Assembly: GCF_003918875.1 (NCBI RefSeq)
Contig: NW_025765969.1
Coordinates: 1,302,001-1,366,000 of the forward strand
DNA from: Haliotis rubra
Taxonomy: Eukaryota
Direction of reading: 5' to 3'
Length of the DNA stretch: 64,000 nt
Of the stretch, positions 18,293-43,416 are shown piece after piece. The position numbers and the translations under genes were made by a program. Each line of letters opens with the position of its first letter. The stretch's first letter is position 1. A model generated the notes under the pieces. That model worked only from the letters and a program-made list of their open reading frames with translations. It ran no database searches and had not been told where the DNA came from.

Positions 18293-20296
18293 CTGTACTG
18301 TGGCACTGGGTGTGTCAACATGGCAAGTGACAAGATGGATGAACTCTGACAGTCATTTCATTTTTCACTTTCCCCATATACATTAATGCCAATCCAATTT
18401 GGCCAAATCAAGACTTAGCATTGATTAATCAAACCCAAGCCCCTCCATCTTATTACTTAACTGAGTGCATGTATCTGTAGTGCTGTTTGGTGCTTGAATT
18501 ATCTTACTTTAACTTGAAAATAGCACCAGAAAAATTACTCAAGTTACTCATAATGCATGCACGTTTAAAATATCTTTAGTGAATCTGAGCCTGTGTTGGA
18601 TCATTGACAGTATTTGCATCAAGAATATACAAGCTCAATTTGAAAAACGGGGGGAAGACCAAGGGAGACAACTCTTGTGGGGTTAAGACAACAGGAAGTC
18701 AATGTTGAAGCCATTTCGGATTGAGCGTGACAAAAGCTTTTGTTATCTTTCAGAGCACTGATGACAATAAATGCTGCCATTTGCCATCTCAATTCATTAA
18801 CAATAATGGATAGATACCAACAAGATACTGAACTGCCAATCTTTAGTGATAACACCCCTTTCAAGTTTCAGAAGCAATCTTGGTGCTAGCTAGTTGCAGA
18901 TAACTATGGTATTGAACTGAAAGAACTAATTGAAACCTTTCTGGCACAAAAAACCCTATTTCTTCAGTTGCACTAAAGATTTTCAGATACTTCCAATAAT
19001 GATGTACATAAATTAATATGTTCTGGTGGCCTATTTATCACCAGCAAATGAGAAAGGTACATTTAACTTCAAATTTCAATTCAAGGGCCCTCAAAGTACA
19101 TTTCACAACTATCACAATGAATAGATCTTGCACATTTTTAAAAGCTCTGTCTGCACAACTCAGGAAAATGTCCAAAGATTCTTGACTACATACCATGATC
19201 AAGCACAGTTCAGATATTATAGAACTGCTGGTCAGCATGAAAAGATTGTTTTAAAAGCACGCCTTCACAAAGAATATGCCAAAATGAAACTGGTACAAGG
19301 CAAAAAGTCAGTATAGGCTGGATCTTTGGGTTAATTTGTATCCCAAACTGTCTTGTATAGGATGAAAAGCATAAAATTTATTTAGAACTACTGTACCTTT
19401 ACATCTCATATATTCCAATTAAATATTATTGTATTTCACCTTTTCCTTGACCTTGGGGCCATCAACTGTTTGAATAGTCCTTACAGAAAGGTCCCATATA
19501 TTAATGTATATTAATGCAGAGCTCTTGATGGATCAGAAAATTTGCCTTAGCCTTCAAGTTAGAGGCAATTTTTCCTAACAAGTTGACATCCTTGACAAAT
19601 TTCTAGGCCTGGTTATACTTATTACAAGACCTTTTGTCGACTATGTGGAATGGAAAATGCATATCACTATTCGTTCATATAGGGGCTGCAATATATTTAG
19701 TCTGCATCTCTTATTGACAGTTGTGTAAACCAAATGGACATTTCTAAGAAAGAAATAATGGCTTTATTCTGACGCCAAACTACAAAATTATATTTTGATT
19801 CAGAAAGAAATATGGCCTGATTGTTTATCAGTGACGAAATTTAGCCACTCGTACAGTCTGAACATCCAGGGACAATCCACCTTTCATGTCAACTAGTTAT
19901 TTGTTTTAACTATTTTGTTGCTAACTGGGATTTCTTTCGAGTTTCAATGAGTCTTGTCAGTTACAAAAAACACAAAATTTGTCTCACTGTACTACCAAAC
20001 TGAATTACGATGTATATATTCCTAGACTGGAATTCAATAGAAATTAGCTGCTGAATCCAATAGCTGCCCCTGAGCAGGTCTAGATAACCCCCTGATGTTA
20101 CATAAAGAACATTACGACTTTATGTTAAAATGTGCAACACTTCCATAAATCTTCAAAGGACATACTTGTGCTTTTCAGATAAAGATTTTGCGAAACTACT
20201 TGAAATTTTACAGCATTAGTTTTTCGTTTTTTTAGCAGAATACATTTCATGAAGAAACCAGCAGTTCTGTGAGGATGTATTTCAAAAGATAATTAC

Positions 20297-21188
20297 CGTC
20301 ATTGCTGTAATCTGCTTCGTTATCATCGCCGTCGTCATTTTCATCTTGGAATACTAAAAAGTCATCTGCACTTTGGTCACCATATCTTGCTTGACTAGTA
20401 CTGGGTTCGGCGTAATCTGGCACATGTGGAACGTTTTGATAGAAGGACGATGATGAAGAACCGGGTGATTGAGAATGTGATGATTGTGGATGAGAGAGTC
20501 GATCTAAAGCTGCCTTGGACGTTTGCGTATGAGGTACATCGGATGAATAATCTATTTGCATGTATGGAGTCTCTTTCTTTGGCACAACATCATCAGGATC
20601 ATGGTCTGGTTCTATTTCTATTAAATCTGGATCTTCTGGTTCTTGTTTCACATTCACTGGAGTGTCATTTTTGGGTTTTGATTGATGAGAGTGATTTGAA
20701 GGACTTGAACTTATTTGAGAATGTGGACGACGATGAACAGGTGATCTGGGTCTTGGAGACTCAGAAAAAGAAGTCCTACTGCTTTTTGCAGCCGGCTGTG
20801 GCATAGACACAGAACTTTCATGCAGTCTTTTGGCAGGATGTGACAAATATACTGTTTGCTGCACCGTTTGTATTGTGGACATATTATTAGAATTGTAATT
20901 ATCATTGTCATTTTCTTGAGGCATTAATGTGCGGTCCACATCAAACACAGAGAGTTTTAAAGTCTTACATTCACTCTTTGATATCATGCTTGCATTTGAC
21001 GATACTCCGTCCACTTTGAACGTTAGTTTGTTTGAGCGTAACACAACCTGCACATTGGCATCTTGCGTTGTGCCGTATGAGTTCACTGAGGCCGGGAATT
21101 CAACATTGGAAGTCGGCCCCTTTTGAAGCGAGGAAAATACATTGCACAATTCCACAGGAATCGTGAACTCTAGTGTTTCAATAAACAT
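20297..21188 (-). CDS. Gene A constant exon: unknown N-terminal domain + S/P/acidic linker of a putative transcription factor
   Basis: Paralogous to 25676-26543 from MFIETLEF onward; similarity ends at the phase-1 donor G|gtaatt; VKQE SUMO-type motif. Confidence 0.85.
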
Positions 21189-21520
21189 GTTGATTATGCA
21201 GAGGACCACAACACAAATATCACAAACCGCTTGAATTATTCCGATTAATGAGCAGTCAGACGATCGGTATATCACCGGTGATGATAAAACCTCACGTTGT
21301 AGCTGGTCGCCATTGTTTGCCAGTTTCGAGCAGGTGCGCGTTCAGAAAAAAAACACTCTTCTTGACCTACCCACAAGCCTCAATTTGAACGACTGCAAAT
21401 GTACACATTAACAGTCTTTGATATCTATTAAATGTGCTGCAAGGAAACTCGGCGACGAAATGAGTTCTTTCACGTGGTAAACTTGGTTTGTAATCTTCTT
21501 CCTGGCCACATTCAAATTTC

Positions 21521-22046: not shown

Positions 22047-22206
22047 GGGGCGGTGGGGTAGCCAAGTGGTTAAAGCGTTCGCTTGTCACGCCGAAGACCC
22101 GGGTTCGATTCCCTACATGGGTACAGTGTGTGAAGCCCATTTCTGGTGTCTCCCGCCGTGATATTGCTGGAATATTGCTAAAAGCGGCGTGAAACTAAAC
22201 TCACTC
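22047..22206 (+). mobile_element. tRNA-derived SINE family 1
   Basis: Full length, TSD tctattttcaata. Confidence 0.9.
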
Positions 22207-22587
22207 TATTTTCAATAGATATATTTGCACACAACCAACATACATTTGCACAGAAAAAAAGAGAAAAGATCTTTTTCCAAATAATGTACAACAATTGCAA
22301 CAAAACACCTTTTCCACATAGTGTACTCGAAGGATGAAGTCCCTTAAAAAGAATAACTTCAAAATATATATCTAAAAGTAAACAAGAAATTGAGCCAAAA
22401 ATAATGACTACTTAATGTAGATTGGCCAGAATATTCCATACTTCAGTTGGATATCAAGTAAATATACTTACCAGGATCAGTCAGACAGACTGCCCTTTTC
22501 ATGACAAATATGAGCTAAAACCGCCATAAACACATGCAAAGGAAAGTCAAGTGTTCATTGAACAAGCACAGATCAACTGTATAGTTA

Positions 22588-22870: not shown

Positions 22871-22883
22871 TTAATGTTCGTGA

Positions 22884-23046
22884 GGGACGGATGGGTAGCC
22901 CAGTGGTTAATGCGTTCGCTCGTCAAGCCGAAGACCTGGGTTCGATTCCCCACATGGGTACAATGTGTGAAGTCCATTTCTGGTGTCCCCCGCCATGATA
23001 TTGCTGGAATATTGCTAAAATTGGGGTAAAACCAAACTCACTCACT
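22884..23046 (+). mobile_element. tRNA-derived SINE family 1
   Basis: Aligns to family consensus. Confidence 0.85.
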
Positions 23047-23427
23047 GAAATGTTGCACAAATCAACCTCTATCAATTAGACTTACATGGTCTTTTCAGTT
23101 CCCATAACACTTTCTCTTGTAATTTTACATGCAAATATATGATGTAACTTGGACCCAATTTTATAGTCGATTTCGGTATATCTATAATCGTCGGTCAGAT
23201 GTATCACGCAAGAGGTTGAGCCCAGTAAATCTGCAAAATGTCTTGACCACTTAGTTGTATTAAAGTGGTAAGTTATTTGACCAAATTATATCGCCCATAA
23301 GACCGGGGTTAGCCTTGTATGTGTCGTCGTATCAGATATGTATGTTTCAATGTTTTCGAAAAATAGATTCATCGTTGTTTGGAAGTATCGATGTAACATT
23401 TTGATGAACTGGAAGTTTTGTAATAGA

Positions 23428-25675: not shown

Positions 25676-26543
25676 ATGTTCATCGAAACGCTTGAGTTTA
25701 CAATTCCTGTGGAATTGTGCAGTATTTTTTCAAGCCTCCAGAAGGGCCACAGGTCAAACGTTGAGTTTCCTGCATCAGTGAACTCTTATGGCACAACGCA
25801 AGATGCCAATTTGCAGGTTGTGTTACGCTCAAACAAACTAACGTTCAAAGTGGACGGTGTGTCGTCAAATGCAAGCATGATATCAAAGAGTGAATGTAAG
25901 ACTTTAAAACTCTCGGTGTTTGATGTGGACAGAACATTAATGCCTCAAGAAAATGACAGTTACGATTCTAATAATATGTCCGCAGTGCAGCATTCAACAC
26001 CTGTGTCATTTCCATCCAAAAGACATCATGAAATCTCAGTGTCACAGCCACCTGCTAAAAATCGTAGGACTTCTTTTTCTGATTCATCAAGACCCAGATC
26101 TCCACTTCATCGTCGCTCACAACCTCAATCCAGTCCACGTCCATCTATTAACACACAATCAAAATCCAAAAATGACTCTCTGGTGAATGTGAAACAAGAA
26201 CCAGAAGATCCAGATTTAATAGAAATAGAACCAGACCATGATCCTGATGATCTTGTGCCAAAGAAGGAGACTCCATACATGCAAATAGATTATTCATCCG
26301 ATGTACCTCATACGCAAACGTCCCAAGCAGCTCTAGATCGACTCTCTCATCCACAATCATCACATTCTCAATCACCCGGTTCTTCATCATCGTCCTTCCA
26401 TCAAAACGTTCCACATGTGCCAGATTACGCCGAACCCAGTACTAGTCAAGTTCATCATGGTGACCAAAGTGCAGATGACTTTTTAGTGTTTCAAGAACAA
26501 GACGAAGATTGTGATGACAACGATGCTGATTATGGAAATGATG
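25676..26543 (+). CDS. Gene B constant exon: unknown N-terminal domain + S/P/acidic linker
   Basis: 289 codons + 1 nt, phase-1 donor G|gtaatt at the same position as in gene A. Confidence 0.85.
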
Positions 26544-28644
26544 GTAATTATATTCTTCAGTTCTTCATCCTTCAGAAGCTGCTGGCCATGCTCACAACTT
26601 TCCAAAGTTTTGTATTTGAGTAGGCAAGATTAGGAAGGCAATTCATTATTTAATCAGGTCCTTGCTTTACTGAAAAACTAACCGTAAGAAACATTCTTTG
26701 TATGGGGAAACATTGCACAGTTATTTGGGCTGCAACAAACCATATTAAAGTCAAAATAAATGTTTAAGAGAGTTGACTAATGTCCTGCCTTGGTTAAATA
26801 TTTTTCATGTTGCATATCGTTCCTGCAGTATTGAAACAATCTCAAACTCAGAAGTTTTCCCCCCAAATCTGCAAAAGGTGTGTGTAGGCTGAATCTATAT
26901 TCTGAAATATGGAAATAAACTTAAACGGTACATTGTTATGAGCATTTGATAAACATATGGCATATTTTCCTTCACTGGTGAAGAGTTGATAGCAAAAACT
27001 GAGGGTTCAAAGTGGTGATTTGTAATTGAATTGAGAGTAATTTCTTATTCAATTAATAATGGAAATTATTACAAAAGCAAGTTGCCTTCCTAATGTTTTT
27101 ATAAAACAGATTCACAAAATTTCTAAAGGGTGACAAACACAAAATATCCAACATGACTACATATGGGTAAACATTTACCAAGCTGAGAGGCAGATTTAGA
27201 AACAATGGCAAACACTTTGAAAGTATCCTTGGTCATTCAGTTTATAAGAATGTAAAAAAAAAGAGATGTCTTGGTAGTCCTCCTGCTTCCATACATTCCC
27301 AGCATAGTTTTTGCAAATCGTAAAAATTAAGTTGCAGCAACTGATATTGCTTAATGATTCAGAGACATTTACATGTTTTTTCATTTTCACTGATCAAGAT
27401 AATAAGCTTTGCTTGTGGATGGGCCCAGGTTGTTTATCAAAATGGAATGGAGCTTTGATGCACTTAATTGTCAAGGATGTAATTTAAGGTGCTCAGCTCC
27501 TTTCCTGACTGTAAATCGCCACCTAAATTTTTGTGTAGTAAGTAGTTCAATATTGTAAGTGATTGAAATTAAAAATTGAAATTAATTCACAACACATTTT
27601 GTTCATGACCTCAATATTGCTGAAAAAAAGTTCCCAAATAGTATGTTTGAGATGACATTTTGAAAAATGCTGTCGAGGAAATTATGTTGTTGTGAAACAT
27701 CCCTCCAGATCTATCTTGTGATAAAATCGGTTGCCACACCGGGGTGTATTTTTGTTAACTTTGACGGTACATGTGCTGTGATTATTCCTGATGGATTTGG
27801 TTGCCCAGACAAGTTCTTAGCATTGCCAGCAGTTTGTTTTTGTACAAAGTTTGATCATGAACATTAATTGAGAACTTACAATTCTGTAACATTTTAATAC
27901 TGATAGGTGAACTTCTGAACCATAGTCGAAGATACATTTTTATTATTTGTTAAGTTAGGTGTCCCTGTTTATACTTCTCAAAGAAAGTCTAAGGATCAGC
28001 AGATTTTTATGTTGCTATAGTTACTGTCATGCTGTAATACCATCTATGCTGTTCATGACATGGAGTAATTATTGTAATGTGAAAGTATTGTGTTCCTTAA
28101 ATGATCTGGAGTAGTATTGATGGTGCACGTAAACATGAACAGTTGAAAAACACAATTTATACTCAGATAGATTTTTGTCTTTGTTACTTAATCTTTAAGT
28201 GTTGATTGGAACATCAGAAAGCTTGCATGATAGTTAAGTTAAAGGGTGTATTTGCATTTATTGTTTTGGCGTATTTCAAGTCTTTGTGTTCTCAACAAAT
28301 AGTGTTAATGATCCAGCTCTGTCAAAAACAGTTTCTTTAAAATGTTAAAATTAAATCACGTTTTGTGTGTAAAAGTAAATGTCAGTGTTGGTGCCTTGTT
28401 TTAATTTATGGTAATTGTTAAGCACCATTTTTAGTTATGTACACACATGCACTTATTTAGCAGGTGACAAGATAGATTGATAAACCTGGTGAGGTTTTTC
28501 ATTCTGTGAAATTAAAACTGGTTTTAGCTACATAAACTGTTAGAAGAGTCAAAAAGGGATGAGTGAAATTGCTCAGGAAAGAGTTTCCTCCCTTTAATCC
28601 ATCTTGTCACTTGCCATGTTGACACACCCAGTGCCACAGTACAG

Positions 28645-31153: not shown

Positions 31154-31470
31154 TTGCTGGCCATAGTTTCAAATACCACAGCTTTATGTTGAAGAGACTG
31201 TGTCGAATATGTGGGAAGCTAGCGGACGGTGGCCCTAAGAAAATAAAATTCCAGCAAGAGCTGCTGGAATTGTTCCATGTCAACGTTTTTGCCGATGTCC
31301 CAGGTGTACATCCAGTGAAAATTTGTCTAGCCCACAAACAAGTTCTGAATCGCTTCAAGCGAGCAAAGGTGTCAGGGAGGCCGTACAGCACCCATGCTGT
31401 TCCCCTTGAGTTTGCTCCCTATGACGAAATCCACTCAGACTGTTTTATATGCTTTCCCTTTTGTGGATGA
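31154..31470 (+). CDS. Gene B variable exon B0: RAG1 N-terminal/Chapaev-like zinc-binding domain
   Basis: Acceptor ccattgttcttcag, phase 1 and in frame; H-x3-LKRLCRICG...F-x-VNV-x2-D-x3-VHP-x2-IC...CFIC matches the RAG1 N-terminal motif pattern as I recall it. Confidence 0.7.
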
Positions 31471-38279: not shown

Positions 38280-38575
38280 GTATGCATGGTTTTGGTTACA
38301 GTTACTATGACCAACCCGCAAACTCGTTTACACCTGGTCTGGGCAGTGCAGGTGGAGGAACGCATCTGAGCACCTTCCCCTGCCCACAGTGTGATCGCGT
38401 CTTCACAAACTCTCTCACCAGAAGGTTTCATATCGAGACCATTCATGATCAGAGGGAGTTTGCATGTGTGTGTGGAAAGGTTTACAAATACCGTACAGGG
38501 TTACACAGGCACTGGAGGCAGAGCAAGGAGTGTGCACCTTCTTCTAGCGGGGATCCTGGAACTGTCTACTCCTAA
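38280..38575 (+). CDS. Gene B variable terminal exon B6, zinc-finger pair
   Basis: Acceptor tttttgctgtttcag, phase 1; CPQC...HIETIH...CVC...HWRQSKEC. Confidence 0.85.
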
Positions 38576-40492
38576 CCTTGGATGGACAGTGTGCGAAATT
38601 TACGCTGGTCCTGTGGTCCCTGGCTAGTAAAAATGCATCAGGACCACTAAAGTTTGCAGTGGACCTTGTGGCCAGTGAATTTTGTATTGATAGTTCAGTA
38701 AATCTACGAATGTTATTTTGGACCAGTGAAGTACAGACAGGACCACCAATTATTGTCCACTCACTGGTCCTGTGGTCTTGCGGGAAATGTTGAAAGGTTT
38801 CTTTCCCTGATGGAGTGTTTTGTTGCTGCTTGTCTCAGCAATATTCCTTAATGTCATCACAGCAGCTGATAAACGATTGAATCTGGAAAAAACAATACAG
38901 TGAAAAATATCACGGTCAAGGATCCATGCCATTGGGGTGCGATAGGCTGTCGACAATAACTTTACCTGATCAACATATTCATTTAGTCATCTCTAAGGTG
39001 CAGGTTGCTGGGGGGCCAATTTAAATCTGGAATTCCCTTGAGTTAAATTGCTGATCTGAGACAAATCACTGCCAAAGTTTGTGTCAAAACTTTTATTAGT
39101 TTCTCAGTCTGTACCAAAAACGTTTGAGAAAACTACCCTGAGCATTGCTCTTAGCCCCATTTTCAGTAGAACTTCTGACTTTTAGGGCTATTAATGGCAG
39201 TGCTAACTCGTCCGAAAATATTTTGCTCAATTTGGACTTTGGATCAGCGGTCAAAGCCACACACTGTTGTCAGCTTGCTGCTTTTGATGCTTAGCAATTG
39301 ATGTGATGAAATGTCGCTGTGAAGGAGGAAGAGTGCATAGGAGGTTGTTATGAAGCTCCTTCAACAAAATACCCATCTCCAAGGCGTCCAAGGGTGGTGT
39401 TGCTGGTTTCATAATTTTGTTTTTGTTGCTGATCCTATTCAAAATGGGAGAAATGATTCATGCATTCATAATACATTGTTGTGTAGTTTATGCAGGAATC
39501 TTGTACTAAAGCGGGACTTTCAGCCAGACACTGCATGTGTTGTTTGAATGTTTTCGGTCAAGATCTTCTGTGATGAAGTCTTAGATTTTATGAAGTCTTA
39601 GATTTTCTTGTGACCAGGGTAACTGTGGTAGTTAATGAAGTGTATCCCCTACCTTGTGTTTCTCTCTTGGTTATCTCTGGTGCTGTGTGTCCATGTGTTC
39701 TTAGATATTTTCGTCTCAAGTAATTACAATGTTTCAGGGTTTCACATGAGTCATGTATGTTGGACCCAATAGAAGTCTGTTTCAGATGTTCCGCATGATT
39801 TCATCATGAAGTGTTTTAAGCGACATAATGTTTGTGATATCGTCATGGTTACCAATGTCAATATAATCAAATCATGCATTTCTCTGTAAAATAATTATCA
39901 TTGAGTCATGATTTCTAACTATTTCACACAAAAGAAGGTAAAATCCTCAGGTTGTTATGCCATCACCATGTTTGCCCCGGCAAGGTTGCATTTGAAAATA
40001 AAGATGTCGGTATATATTTGTGTTGGTCATACTTTTATTTTTTTATGTACCTATAACGTTATAACAATAAATAATTTCATATCAAAATTTGCCAAATCGG
40101 TATCTGCAGTCTTACATGTGCTGCTCATTTGATGGGTGGATGAAGTTATACGATTCTTTGAAGACAGCCCGATTTTGGACTGTTGTCCAGTCAAAACTGA
40201 ACTTTCCACTCCTTCTGCAGGCATTAGCTATGTCACAGTTGAGTCAGAGACAGTTCTGCTGATTGCTGCAACAATGTGGATGTCTGGCCTGATGTAGAAC
40301 AAAAATATGCAAGAGTACATAATCCTATATGCTTAGGCATGTAAAGAGTTAAAAACAATCCCGTTAAAAAGAAATGAATTGTACAGTCTGAACGTAATTA
40401 CGTGAAAACAAATTGTTTGAGAAATATTTTATCATGCCTTTAAGAAACAAAAGAATATTCTGATGGACTCTTGCATATTTCTGCTGTTTCAG

Positions 40493-41340
40493 GCTGTCAG
40501 GTACACTTTGACACAACGTCAGGTGACCTCCAAACCCACCAATCAGCAACTGTGTTTGATACATCAGGTGACCTATCAACAGGCACGTTACAAAGACAAA
40601 TGACCGTGTTTGAGCCTAAGAAAAGGAAACTGACTGTGAAATCCTTAGAAACAAAGTTCTTAGCCCTGTTGGAGGTGGAGAAGGGACAGCAATCCAAGGC
40701 CCAAATAGCCAGGGAGTTTGGAGTTCCCCCGAACACACTGTCCACGTGGTTAAAACAGGCTGATAGAATCAAAACCGCTTATTTAGAATGCAGCTTCAAC
40801 CCAACTCGTAAACGTCTCCGAAGCGTCCAGTATGAAGATGTTGATGATGCTACTTTACAGTGGTATAGAAATGCTATCATGAATGACTTTCCAGTGTCTG
40901 GTCGTATCCTCTTGGCCAAGACCCAGGAGATTGCTCTACAACGAGGTCATGTAGATTTCAAGGCTTCTCTGGGTTGGTTGGAAAGGTTTAAGTGTAGACA
41001 CGGCATCACTTTTGGGAAGGGGAAGGGAAGACACAAACAGTTCAAATCCATGATTGATGAATATGGGCCAGTGGATTACACAGTTTCGGAAAATAGACAT
41101 GATAATGTTGGAGTGGAGGCGAAAGATGGCGCTGAAGCTGTTGATTACACGAAAGTCGAGACAAATCCAGGTCGTGAAGGTCGTGCAGTGTGTGAAGGAA
41201 ACACAGATGATGATGTTGTAGACTACACCATGTCTGAAACTAAGCTTGATGAGCATGACAATTCGTCAGAAGCTAAACTTTGTAGTCAAGATGGTGAACT
41301 GTTTTCGGATACTAAATATTCAAGTCAGGATGGTGATTGA
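40493..41340 (+). CDS. Gene B variable exon B7: pogo/Tigger/CENP-B-type double HTH, no DDE domain
   Basis: Acceptor ttctgctgtttcag, phase 1; IAREFGVPPNTLSTWLK and FKASLGWLERFKCRHGI motifs; acidic tail then stop. Confidence 0.85.
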
Positions 41341-41777
41341 ATTATAACATGGCTGATTGTGTATCTGAGCTGAGACTTGATGATCCAGAATGTTAATATG
41401 ACAGGTTTATGGAGACCAAATATTTTAGGCAGGTGAATGAAAGAAATTAATCTGTTCTGGGGATGACAATATCTTATCTGAAACAATTATCAAGAAAATG
41501 GACATGACTGTGTGTCTGAAGACTAAACATTAAAACCAGAGCTTTTTGAAATGTGTAATGGATGGATTATGCTGTTTTGGCCAAAATTTGATGATAACGC
41601 GACGCTTTGAGATTTGACATTCAATACAGAAGGGTGATCGGCTTAAATAAATGTGTTGGATCTTGATTCATTGGAAAACAAATAGATTGTAATCATATAT
41701 TATCTTGGTAACTTTAGTCCACTTGTCTTTTGTGTTGATTGACAATGTTGCTAGTCCTTCACATGTGATACGTGCAG

Positions 41778-42187
41778 TGGTGATGGTCCGATTAATTGAA
41801 ATAATCGAAGATTGGTCGCAGTGACAACACGACCAAGCAATCGATCATGTTTTTTCATAATCGAACACAAACAAATCTGGAACACTTGTTTTCATTAACA
41901 GTATTTTTCACTAGGTTTGTTTTGTCTGTTACATTTCATAAGCACTACAAACTCGTTCCAAGTCATGATTGAATTTATCTTAAAGACTCTAAGAAATTTA
42001 TGTTCCTAACATACTAGTCATCCTTTAAAGATGTGAAATTTTGCCCCCAAAGAACTACATGTTTTTTTCCTTATTTTTTGGTACATTAACATTTCATAAA
42101 TGACGCGAACCAATTATTTTTTCGATGATTGATCGGTTGTAATGAACCAATCATCAATTATGAGATTTTAACCAATTCCCAACACTA
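41778..42187. mobile_element. hAT-like MITE (same family as 10057)
   Basis: Shared ends; 8-bp TSD acgtgcag/acctgcag. Confidence 0.65.
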
Positions 42188-42435
42188 ACCTGCAGTAACA
42201 GAGCTTGTAGGCTGTATTGGGACTGTCTAACAAGCATAGCTTGATATTTTACACATTGACACTGTTTACACATTAAGACGGGTCTGATGACCTTGGGCAG
42301 TTAGGTAATCCAGTGGTTAAAGTGTCTCGAAGACATTTCCCCATGGGTGATTGATATGTGAAGCCAGTTTCTTGTGTTAACAACCGTGATATTGCTGGAA
42401 TATTGTGGTACAAAACCATACTTCCTCTGAAAGCT

Positions 42436-42597
42436 GGGGCGGTGGGGTAGCCTAGTGGTTAAAGCGTTCGCTCGTCACGCCGAAGACCCGGGTTTAATCC
42501 CCACATGGGCACAATGTGTGAAGCCAAATTCTGGTGTCCCCCGCTGTGATATTGCTGGAATATTGCTAAAAGGGGCGTAAAACCATACTCACTCACT
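42436..42597 (+). mobile_element. tRNA-derived SINE family 1
   Basis: Full-length copy. Confidence 0.9.
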
Positions 42598-43416
42598 CCT
42601 CTGAAACCTCCATGAAGCTGGATTGTGTAAGTACTGACATCTGTGGACCAATAATGGCACAATGACTATGAACAACTTGTGTGTCCTAAATAATCACTGT
42701 TTTTCTTATGGCACAACAGTTGAAACTGGACATTATTAGCACAAGCATTGAGTTGCACATGATCAAGTTAATGTCTTCATTTCGCTGAGCGATAATTTTT
42801 TCTATACTTTTAAAAGACATAACCTCAGTTTTCACTTGTTAGTGGTACACAATAACAAATGTACCAATTTCAGAGAATAATTTGACAATTAGTGCTTTCA
42901 TTATAGATTCATTATATATATAAAGTGGAAATGTTTTATGGTTTCAATTAAACTTCCAATGTTTTCGTATTGTGTTTGTCCTTTTGAATTCAATGTTATC
43001 TTGAGGGTAGATGGTGTGAGCATTCACTCATGGTGAAGAGGACCAAAGTTTTGATTCCACACCGGGGATGTATTCCAGCGTTAGTGCTTCTAAGGGTTAC
43101 ATTGGTGGTAGGGTAGCCTAATAGTTAGAGCACCTGCTCATCACACTGAAGACCTGGGTTTGATTCCCCACATGGGTACAATGTGTAAAGCCCATTTCTG
43201 GTGTCCCTGCTATGATTTTGCTGGAATATTGCTAAAAAGTGCTTAAAACCAAATTTCCTCACTCACTCACTGAATGTTACAACTACAGGATAATGCTGTA
43301 AAACGTTGCCCCTGCATGTGGTCTGAAAGTCTGGACCCATATGGGGTAAAGGGGTACCCTAGTGGTTAAAAGTCTGCTCTTCACCCTGAAATTCTGATTT
43401 TGATACCCTACAGGGT

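What the first reader, a model, noticed from the sequence alone, without database searches (positions are those of the whole stretch)
40493..41340. pogo/Tigger (CENP-B-type) HTH exon slotted into the zinc-finger array
Seen: same strand, phase-1 acceptor, intact 282-codon frame with both HTH subdomains, no DDE domain and no TIRs. The tail has three spaced PVDYT/AVDYT/VVDYT repeats (41068, 41137, 41215), and decayed copies of the repeat seem to continue past the stop. Inference: the array acts as a trap that recruits transposase DNA-binding domains, comparable to FLYWCH/BED domains in mod(mdg4) exons. PVDYT resembles PxDLS-type CtBP corepressor motifs (speculative). Such an isoform could bind pogo-type TIRs.
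Basis: partly seen in the sequence, partly recalled or inferred. Interest (0 to 1): 0.7.

Follow-up and report, generated by a model that had tools for sequence, protein, structure and literature searches.

The report
Captured pogo DNA-binding exon in abalone
One of the many interchangeable last exons of an abalone-only regulator gene is the DNA-gripping front half of an old pogo jumping-gene enzyme, kept almost unchanged across five abalone species; it is a clear case of a known route to new DNA-binding proteins and is already listed, uncharacterised, in RefSeq.

Summary
Window 40493-41340(+) is an intact phase-1 terminal exon encoding both HTH halves of a pogo/CENP-B-type DNA-binding domain. 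It has no DDE domain and no TIRs.

It is a real, spliced exon. RefSeq XP_046566453.1 (Haliotis rubra LOC124275018 isoform X2, 571 aa) is exactly the constant exon (25676-26543) joined to this exon. Orthologous isoforms exist in H. asinina, H. cracherodii and H. rufescens. A fifth species carries the intact exon in an unspliced contig.

Other evidence points the same way:
- The locus is colinear across species and single-copy.
- The acceptor region is nearly invariant.
- The HTH core has dN/dS 0.008-0.03 at dS 0.34-0.61.
- The ancestral transposase ATG is lost in one species.

The divergently transcribed sister gene A has its own HTH exon outside the window. All host HTH exons form one clade against 18 sampled transposases, which suggests one capture followed by exon duplication.

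Two of the three VDYT motifs are invariant and lie in a predicted disordered acidic tail. The claims of "decayed repeats past the stop" and a CtBP motif are not supported. TIR binding is untested.

Verdict: a domesticated transposase DNA-binding domain captured by alternative splicing, a new member of a known kind.

The parts
25676..26543 (+). Constant 5' coding exon of gene B (H. rubra LOC124275018): ATG to phase-1 donor G|GTAATT. Encodes an orphan ~90-aa N-terminal domain plus a Ser/Pro-rich and acidic region (289 aa).
   Evidence: 100% identical to residues 1-289 of P0122 and P0139. No Pfam family. The N-terminal domain was found only in Haliotis.
40303..40316 (+). Left arm of a conserved intronic inverted repeat (AAATATGCAAGAGT).
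   Evidence: the 14-nt core of the arm is invariant in 4 species and unique in the window.
40467..40480 (+). Right arm of the inverted repeat (ACTCTTGCATATTT), 12 nt upstream of the acceptor.
40473..40492 (+). Polypyrimidine tract and CAG acceptor of the HTH exon.
   Evidence: Positions -40..+6 are identical in three species except for 1 nt. It lacks the array's extended acceptor motif: PWM score 1.3 against an array median of 24.9.
40493..41340 (+). The whole alternative terminal coding exon (phase 1; stop at 41338-41340).
   Evidence: It equals residues 290-571 of XP_046566453.1 (P0139).
40493..40599 (+). Linker of 35 codons upstream of the ancestral transposase start. Contains the 14-nt direct repeat 40516-40529 / 40561-40574. 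Predicted disordered.
   Evidence: Met36 (40600) aligns with residue 1 of the full-length transposase P0124. H. asinina has an in-frame 30-nt deletion here. pLDDT is below 50.
40600..41040 (+). Bipartite HTH DNA-binding core (CENP-B_N 40621-40767; HTH_Tnp_Tc5 40831-41019).
   Evidence: Pfam. PDB 1HLV by sequence, E=7e-15. AF2 pLDDT is about 90 for residues ~50-170, and Foldseek gives 1HLV with target-normalised TM-score 0.77. dN/dS is 0.008-0.033.
41041..41337 (+). Acidic, predicted disordered tail with [VL]DYTxSE motifs at 41068-41082, 41137-41151 and 41215-41229, and a conserved SSQDGD end.
   Evidence: Motifs 1 and 3 are invariant in 5 species; motif 2 is lost in H. asinina. Tail dN/dS is about 0.3.
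41529..41651 (+). Candidate poly(A) signals: ATTAAA at 41529 and AATAAA at 41646.
   Evidence: They are not conserved at these positions in the other species. RNA-like contig depth ends before about 41545.

Best explanation
The exon is the DNA-binding N-terminal part of a pogo-superfamily transposase. It has been domesticated as one of about 20 or more alternative terminal exons of an abalone-restricted gene (H. rubra LOC124275018).

Shown: the constant exon (25676-26543) is spliced directly to 40493. This gives a 571-aa protein made of an orphan N-terminal domain, an acidic/Ser-Pro linker, a CENP-B-type bipartite HTH and an acidic disordered tail. The catalytic DDE half and the TIRs are gone. 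The exon is single-copy, syntenic and under very strong purifying selection in at least five Haliotis species.

Inferred: a pogo element landed in the long 3' intron of the array gene. An acceptor about 107 nt upstream of the transposase ATG was used together with the constitutive donor; this is transposase capture by alternative splicing. The DDE part then decayed and the exon was later duplicated into sister arrays (types A1, A2, B). The isoform probably acts like its zinc-finger sister isoforms, as a sequence-specific DNA-binding version of the same N-terminal effector, with the HTH pair reading DNA as CENP-B reads its box. The conserved [VL]DYTxSE motifs in the tail are probably short partner-binding or phospho-regulated motifs.
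For: - Pfam: both HTH domains score above their cut-offs.
- Structure: 1HLV matches by sequence at E=7e-15 and by fold at target-normalised TM-score 0.77.
- Splicing in H. rubra: RefSeq P0139/XP_046566453.1 equals the constant exon plus this exon.
- Splicing in other species: the same junction ...YGNDG|CQVHF appears in H. asinina P0117, H. cracherodii P0114 and H. rufescens P0140.
- RNA-like run X5: a contig aligns from exactly 40492 onward, with 28 non-matching letters upstream.
- RNA-like runs X1, X5 and X15 cover the exon but not the flanking bins 39970-40363. X1 and X15 have no depth at 41546-41742, and X5 only a trace there (0.28).
- The DNA run X22 shows unique-level depth of 12-18 over the exon, against 1e4-1e6 over SINEs.
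- Colinear synteny with the H. asinina and H. cracherodii loci.
- dN/dS is 0.008-0.033 at dS 0.34-0.61 in the HTH core, and all exon length differences are multiples of 3.
- The ancestral start Met36 is Ile in a fifth species.
- Met36 aligns with residue 1 of a full-length transposase.
- No DDE remnant.
- The host exons are monophyletic, 99/99.
Against: - No raw-read junction counts were seen for H. rubra itself. The RNA status of the runs is a guess, and the 28 loose letters of the X5 contig were not displayed.
- RefSeq XP models are automatic predictions.
- DNA binding, target sites and the role of the N-terminal domain are all untested. The AF2 model of that domain was unusable (pLDDT 52).
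- The single-capture inference depends on only 18 sampled transposases, none shown to come from abalone.
- The acceptor lacks the array's extended motif, so how the exon is chosen is unknown.
Confidence: 0.82

Rival explanations
1. A stand-alone nested gene. The HTH ORF would be translated from its own ATG at 40600 from an independent promoter inside the intron, as a TIGD/JRK-like domesticated gene, and not as part of the array gene.
For: Met36 at 40600 aligns with the start of full-length transposases. The acceptor lacks the array-typical extended motif.
Against: That Met is Ile in the DRR299178 species, with no other upstream Met. The frame stays open from the acceptor through the 35-codon linker in all five species, including an in-frame 30-nt deletion. 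The acceptor region is nearly invariant. RefSeq models in four species splice it to the constant exon.
Confidence: 0.05
2. A dead, unexpressed pogo remnant that is open by chance and was swept into gene models by the annotation pipeline.
For: Its origin is clearly a transposon. RefSeq XP models are automatic.
Against: Only 1-4 amino-acid changes in 148 codons against 27-46 nucleotide changes (dN/dS <= 0.033). The position is syntenic. The copy number is unique. The closest transposases are only 37-47% identical. RNA-like contigs are confined to the exon.
Confidence: 0.01
3. Same protein, different role. The DDE-less HTH isoform would act mainly as a repressor of pogo-type elements by occupying their TIRs (analogous to DNA-binding-only transposase repressors), not as a regulator of host genes.
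For: It retains the complete TIR-binding part of a transposase and lacks the catalytic part.
Against: No close pogo relatives were found (best 47% identity), so a cognate active family is not evident. The exon has been conserved since before the three exon types and the abalone species diverged, likely outlasting any single TE family. Not tested directly.
Confidence: 0.1
4. The junction is made in trans. The HTH exon would be transcribed from its own promoter and trans-spliced to the constant exon, as in Drosophila mod(mdg4). The protein would be the same.
For: The array architecture resembles mod(mdg4)/lola. The HTH acceptor differs from its neighbours.
Against: Same strand and colinear order allow ordinary cis-splicing. 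No evidence for a separate promoter was seen. Nothing here distinguishes cis from trans.
Confidence: 0.1

Closest known systems
Host-transposase fusion genes formed by transposase capture through alternative splicing (Cosby et al., bioRxiv 10.1101/2020.05.07.082677; e.g. KRABINER, and from my own knowledge POGK)
   Same: A transposase DNA-binding domain is fused in frame to host exons through an acceptor just upstream of the transposase ORF. It coexists with non-transposase isoforms, and the DNA-binding domain is kept while the catalytic part is lost.
   Different: This is a mollusc, not a tetrapod. The host partner is an orphan abalone-only domain, not KRAB or SCAN. The recipient is a many-member array of alternative terminal exons. 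The captured exon has itself been duplicated into sister arrays.
CENP-B / TIGD / JRK and other pogo-derived CENPB-type proteins, including the mollusc CENPB-type factors surveyed in PMC10027918
   Same: The same bipartite CENP-B_N + HTH_Tnp_Tc5 DNA-binding domain, with 35% identity and target-normalised TM-score 0.77 to CENP-B(1-129). It is also derived from pogo.
   Different: As far as I know, those proteins mostly keep a (dead) DDE region and are stand-alone genes. This one is DNA-binding domain only and exists only as an alternative exon. Haliotis was not among the species in that survey.
Drosophila lola and mod(mdg4) loci
   Same: A constant 5' part is joined to one of dozens of alternative 3' terminal exons, each encoding a different DNA-binding module.
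   Different: There is no BTB domain here. The modules are a two-finger C2H2-type unit, a RAG1-type zinc domain and a pogo HTH. Trans-splicing has not been shown.
Octopus BTB-CENPB proteins (PMC10027918)
   Same: A pogo-type CENPB DNA-binding domain is joined to a non-transposase N-terminal domain in a mollusc.
   Different: The N-terminal domain is different, and no alternative-exon array is reported there. The origins appear independent.

Membership tests
pogo/Tigger (CENP-B-type) transposase DNA-binding domain | CENP-B_N (PF04218) match above gathering score | tested here: met
   33.9 bits against a cut-off of 21.2, aa 43-91
pogo/Tigger (CENP-B-type) transposase DNA-binding domain | HTH_Tnp_Tc5 (PF03221) match above gathering score | tested here: met
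   52.1 bits against a cut-off of 22.2, aa 113-175
pogo/Tigger (CENP-B-type) transposase DNA-binding domain | Fold of two three-helix HTH bundles like CENP-B(1-129) | tested here: met
   AF2 pLDDT is about 90 over residues ~50-170. Foldseek gives 1HLV at E=5.3e-7 and target-normalised TM-score 0.77.
Autonomous pogo transposon | DDE_1 catalytic domain downstream of the HTH | tested here: not met
   tblastn with 11 pogo-type transposases (most full-length) hits only 40498-41109, and the same holds in L001 and L002
Autonomous pogo transposon | Terminal inverted repeats flanking the ORF | tested here: not met
   No inverted repeat brackets the ORF. The only strong one (40300-40320 / 40463-40483) lies wholly upstream of it.
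Autonomous pogo transposon | Multiple near-identical copies | tested here: not met
   One copy in the window. Unique-level depth in the related DNA run X22. Closest database transposases are at most 47% identical.
Host-transposase fusion by alternative splicing | In-frame fusion of a transposase domain to host exons in an mRNA or protein model | tested here: met
   P0139 (XP_046566453.1) equals the constant exon plus this exon, and orthologous models exist in three more species
Host-transposase fusion by alternative splicing | Purifying selection on the captured domain | tested here: met
   dN/dS 0.008-0.033 at dS 0.34-0.61
Host-transposase fusion by alternative splicing | Transcription and splicing shown by reads | tested here: inconclusive
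   Contigs of runs guessed to be RNA cover the exon, and one breaks exactly at the acceptor. No raw junction reads were seen.
lola/mod(mdg4)-type locus | BTB/POZ domain in the constant part | tested here: not met
   No Pfam family at E<=1 in the constant exon
lola/mod(mdg4)-type locus | Array of alternative 3' terminal exons, each with its own DNA-binding module | tested here: met
   18 (+) and 12 (-) zinc-finger exons with phase-1 acceptors in the window. Dozens of RefSeq isoforms.
lola/mod(mdg4)-type locus | Trans-splicing | not testable with these tools
   Needs allele-specific or strand-specific raw reads
CtBP-binding PxDLS motif | P-x-[DEN]-[LM]-[ST...]: Leu or Met at position 4 (from memory of the ELM pattern) | tested here: not met
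   The motifs read P[VL]DYT, AVDYT and [VAP]VDYT, with Tyr at position 4 and Pro not always present

The most novel reading that the evidence does not exclude
An abalone-restricted gene family works as a plug-in platform for DNA-binding modules. It has taken in modules from at least two unrelated transposon superfamilies (pogo HTH and a RAG1/Chapaev-type zinc domain). The HTH isoform would still recognise relics of pogo-type terminal repeats, so that old transposon copies were wired into a lineage-specific regulatory or silencing network.
Probability: 0.15. Interest if true: 0.7.

Novelty: new member of a known kind. Interest (0 to 1): 0.45.

Why it matters
This is a clean, datable invertebrate example of transposase capture by alternative splicing. 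The donor, the acceptor, the ancestral start codon, the loss of the catalytic half and the later exon duplication can all be read from sequence. It also shows that a lola-like "one effector, many DNA-binding tails" locus exists in a mollusc with a non-BTB, lineage-specific N-terminal domain. The HTH isoform gives an experimentally tractable handle (a well-understood DNA-binding fold) for finding what this orphan gene family regulates. It does not open a new category, because the mechanism is established in vertebrates and the isoform is already in RefSeq.

Tried and rejected
1. Donor 28677 as the partner of 40493 is rejected. The annotated proteins read ...YGNDG|CQVHF, which is donor 26543. 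The 1-nt overlap of the X5 contig at 40492 also fits ...GATG and not ...CAAG.

2. A DDE remnant downstream was not found.

3. Flanking TIRs were not found.

4. Decayed VDYT repeats beyond the stop do not rise above shuffled expectation. TRF finds only a 9-nt micro-repeat at 41169-41198.

5. The idea that the HTH acceptor shares the array's extended motif is rejected by the gapless PWM (score 1.3 against a median of 24.9). It resembles only the variant at 38280.

6. Fetching the A-type HTH exon loci failed. P0010, P0061 and P0037 are not on record as longest products, so the position of the array-A HTH exons is unknown beyond "not in the window".

7. Identifying the N-terminal domain failed. 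There is no Pfam hit, no relatives outside Haliotis among 1.84 billion representatives, and the AF2 model has pLDDT 52, too poor to search.

8. No paper was found describing this abalone gene family or its HTH exon.

9. I built no joined exon model myself. The joined protein used (P0139) came from the database.

Full report
**What is at the coordinates.** The + strand is open from the acceptor ...TTTCTGCTGTTTCAG|G (exon start 40493) to the TGA at 41338-41340. The frame is phase 1: one base comes from the upstream exon, followed by 281 whole codons.
- Pfam finds CENP-B_N (33.9 bits, cut-off 21.2, aa 43-91) and HTH_Tnp_Tc5 (52.1 bits, cut-off 22.2, aa 113-175), and nothing else of note.
- The closest solved structure by sequence is the CENP-B DNA-binding domain bound to its box, 1HLV (E=7e-15, query 41-168 against chain 3-129).
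- An AlphaFold model built on a 19-sequence alignment has pLDDT about 90 across residues ~50-170, with two three-helix bundles. The first ~45 residues and residues 176-281 are predicted disordered.
- Foldseek returns 1HLV as the only significant match (E=5e-7, target-normalised TM-score 0.77, 35% identity).

**What is absent.**
- Eleven pogo-type transposases (332-582 aa, most full-length and all carrying DDE_1) hit only 40498-41109 by tblastn. They hit nothing else in the 64 kb, and the same is true of the two orthologous loci. The catalytic half has therefore been deleted or has decayed beyond recognition.
- No inverted repeat brackets the ORF.
- The claimed "decayed copies of the repeat past the stop" are not above chance. 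The best downstream score is 47, against a shuffled median of 45 and a 95th percentile of 49.

**Context.** Earlier notes name the genome as blacklip abalone. My searches agree.
- The minus-strand constant exon (20250-21275) is 100% identical to Haliotis rubra LOC124275011 isoforms.
- The plus-strand constant exon (25676-26543) is 100% identical to LOC124275018 (P0122).
- The two genes lie head to head. Each is followed by an array of phase-1 terminal exons encoding a two-finger C2H2-type module: 12 on the minus strand and 18 on the plus strand within the window.
- The HTH exon sits between the zinc-finger exons at 38280 and 44404.

**Is it a used exon?** Yes, as far as database models and contigs can show.
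- Searching with the paralogous constant exon returned RefSeq isoforms carrying PF03221 and PF04218.
- Two of these are orthologues of this exon: H. cracherodii P0114 (591 aa) and H. asinina P0117 (560 aa). They read ...DADYGNDG|CQVHFDTTS... across the junction.
- The 90% cluster of P0117 contains XP_046566453.1, [quoted passage not shown], 571 aa (P0139). Its sequence is exactly the window's constant exon followed by this exon.
- The cluster of P0114 adds H. rufescens LOC124128726 isoform X2.
- The donor is therefore 26543 (GATG|GTAATT, phase 1), not 28677.
- I built no joined model myself. The joined protein came from the database.

**Read-level evidence.** This is weaker but consistent.
- In three runs whose size suggests transcriptomes (their RNA status is only a guess), contigs lie within the exon: X1 at 40544-41182, X15 at 40538-40922 and X5 at 40492-41252.
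- Depth is zero in all three runs in the upstream bins 39970-40363. In 41546-41742 it is zero in X1 and X15 and only a trace (0.28) in X5.
- The 808-nt X5 contig stops matching exactly at 40492 and continues for 28 letters that do not match the intron. This is what a splice to a G-ending exon would give. Those letters were not displayed, so I could not read the partner.
- A DNA run of a related abalone (X22) has one 2.9-kb contig colinear across 39749-43124. Depth over the exon is 12-18, like the unique flanks, while neighbouring SINEs reach 1e4-1e6.
- The exon is therefore single-copy at 85% likeness or more.

**Conservation.** I fetched the H. asinina locus (L001) and the H. cracherodii locus (L002).
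- The exon lies at the same distance from the gene start (about 14.7-15.1 kb) and in the same order among the zinc-finger exons.
- The 40 nt before the acceptor differ at one position among the three species.
- Exon lengths are 848, 815 and 908 nt. All differences are multiples of three.
- In the 148-codon HTH core, 27-46 nucleotide differences give only 1-4 amino-acid differences. dN/dS is 0.008, 0.033 and 0.027 at dS 0.34-0.61.
- The tail has dN/dS of about 0.3, and the linker has too few sites to judge.
- A sliding-window profile peaks over 40600-41099 and over the ~100 nt before the acceptor.
- A fifth orthologue comes from an unspliced Logan contig (DRR299178, L003/P0141) and is also intact. 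In it, the Met that corresponds to the transposase start is Ile. This argues that translation starts in the constant exon and not inside this exon.

**Origin.**
- Met36 (40600) aligns with residue 1 of a full-length transposase (P0124, 47% identity over 172 residues).
- The acceptor therefore lies 107 nt upstream of the ancestral start codon. [quoted passage not shown]
- The acceptor itself does not carry the array's extended motif (consensus CTTTTTGTTGCTTTCAG). Its PWM score is 1.3 against a median of 24.9 for the array exons, ranking 173 of 7202 AG sites. This fits an independent origin rather than a modified zinc-finger exon.

**Sister exons.**
- Gene A (LOC124275011) has its own HTH isoform, X3 (P0010). 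There are orthologues in H. asinina (P0037) and H. rufescens (P0060), and H. rufescens has a second type (P0061).
I could not fetch those loci.
- In a maximum-likelihood tree of the HTH region, the seven host exons form one clade (99/99) against 18 transposases.
- With that sampling, the simplest history is one capture followed by exon duplication. The B type evolves much more slowly than A1 (terminal branches at most ~0.007, against 0.04-0.07).

**The tail.**
- Across five species, "YGP[VL]DYTVSENR" and "[VAP]VDYT[MT]SETK" are invariant in their cores. The middle AVDYT is lost in H. asinina. The protein always ends in SSQDGD.
- The region is predicted disordered, so these look like short linear motifs.
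- They have Tyr where, from memory, the PxDLS CtBP motif requires Leu or Met. The CtBP idea therefore has no support. What they bind is unknown.

**The partner domain.**
- The constant exon has no Pfam match.
- Its first 100 residues find only ten representatives among 1.84 billion proteins. All are at least 76% identical. The five I looked up carrying a source name are Haliotis; two others (P0019, P0060) were already known to be Haliotis; one unnamed ENA fragment cannot be assigned.
- The structure prediction was too poor to use (pLDDT 52).
- The HTH is thus attached to a lineage-restricted domain of unknown fold. The analogy with BTB in lola and mod(mdg4) is functional speculation only.

**Comparison with what is known.**
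- Mechanistically this is transposase capture by alternative splicing (Cosby et al.).
- By domain, it is one more pogo-derived CENP-B-type factor. Such factors have been surveyed in molluscs, including Octopus BTB-CENPB proteins, but not in Haliotis (PMC10027918).
- Architecturally, the host locus resembles lola and mod(mdg4) without BTB.
- I found no paper on this abalone family.
- The isoform is already present in RefSeq as an uncharacterised protein. The finding is therefore a new member of a known kind: solid and tidy, but not surprising to a specialist.

Noticed in passing
window 40300-40320 and 40463-40483: A 21-nt inverted repeat (90% complementary) lies in the intron just before the HTH acceptor. 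Its 14-nt core (AAATATGCAAGAGT / ACTCTTGCATATTT) is invariant in four abalone species and occurs nowhere else in the window. It could be a regulatory RNA stem masking the branch-point or polypyrimidine region, or the ends of an old small element. The fold z-score is only -1.9, and there is no covariation because the arms never vary.
   Followed up: partly
window 25676-25975: The ~90-aa N-terminal domain of the constant exon has no Pfam match. It finds only ten representatives, all at least 76% identical, among 1.84 billion proteins. All seven representatives whose source is known are Haliotis; one is an unnamed ENA fragment and two were not looked up. AF2 gives pLDDT 52. It is an orphan, lineage-restricted domain.
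   Followed up: partly
window 40516-40529 and 40561-40574: A direct 14-nt repeat (ACGTCAGGTGACCT / ACATCAGGTGACCT) lies in the linker that was once the transposon's 5' leader. It encodes the duplicated TSGDL peptide. One copy is removed by an in-frame 30-nt deletion in H. asinina. It may be a relic of subterminal transposase-binding repeats.
   Followed up: no
window 7323 (-) and 52742 (+): Two AG sites score as high as bona fide array acceptors on the acceptor PWM (25.4 and 24.8) but were not among the zinc-finger exons picked by my ORF filter. They may be alternative acceptors or decayed/extra variable exons.
   Followed up: no
window 42436-42598, 43104-43271, 22050-22210, 22880-23050: tRNA-derived SINE copies, with contig depths of 1e4 to 2e6 in all four runs laid. 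They are absent or different at the orthologous place in the related DNA contig.
   Followed up: no
window 26280-26545 (constant exon) and the HTH tail: Short hydrophobic-Asp-Tyr motifs also recur in the constant acidic region (QIDYSSD, VPDYAEP, DADYGND). The xDY motifs of the HTH tail may belong to a wider pattern in these proteins.
   Followed up: no
window 31186-31470: The first variable exon of gene B gives a weak Pfam match to RAG1_imp_bd (E=0.0026, below the cut-off). A H. rufescens isoform (P0105) carries PF12560 in the precomputed list. This is consistent with earlier notes of a RAG1-type zinc exon in this family.
   Followed up: partly
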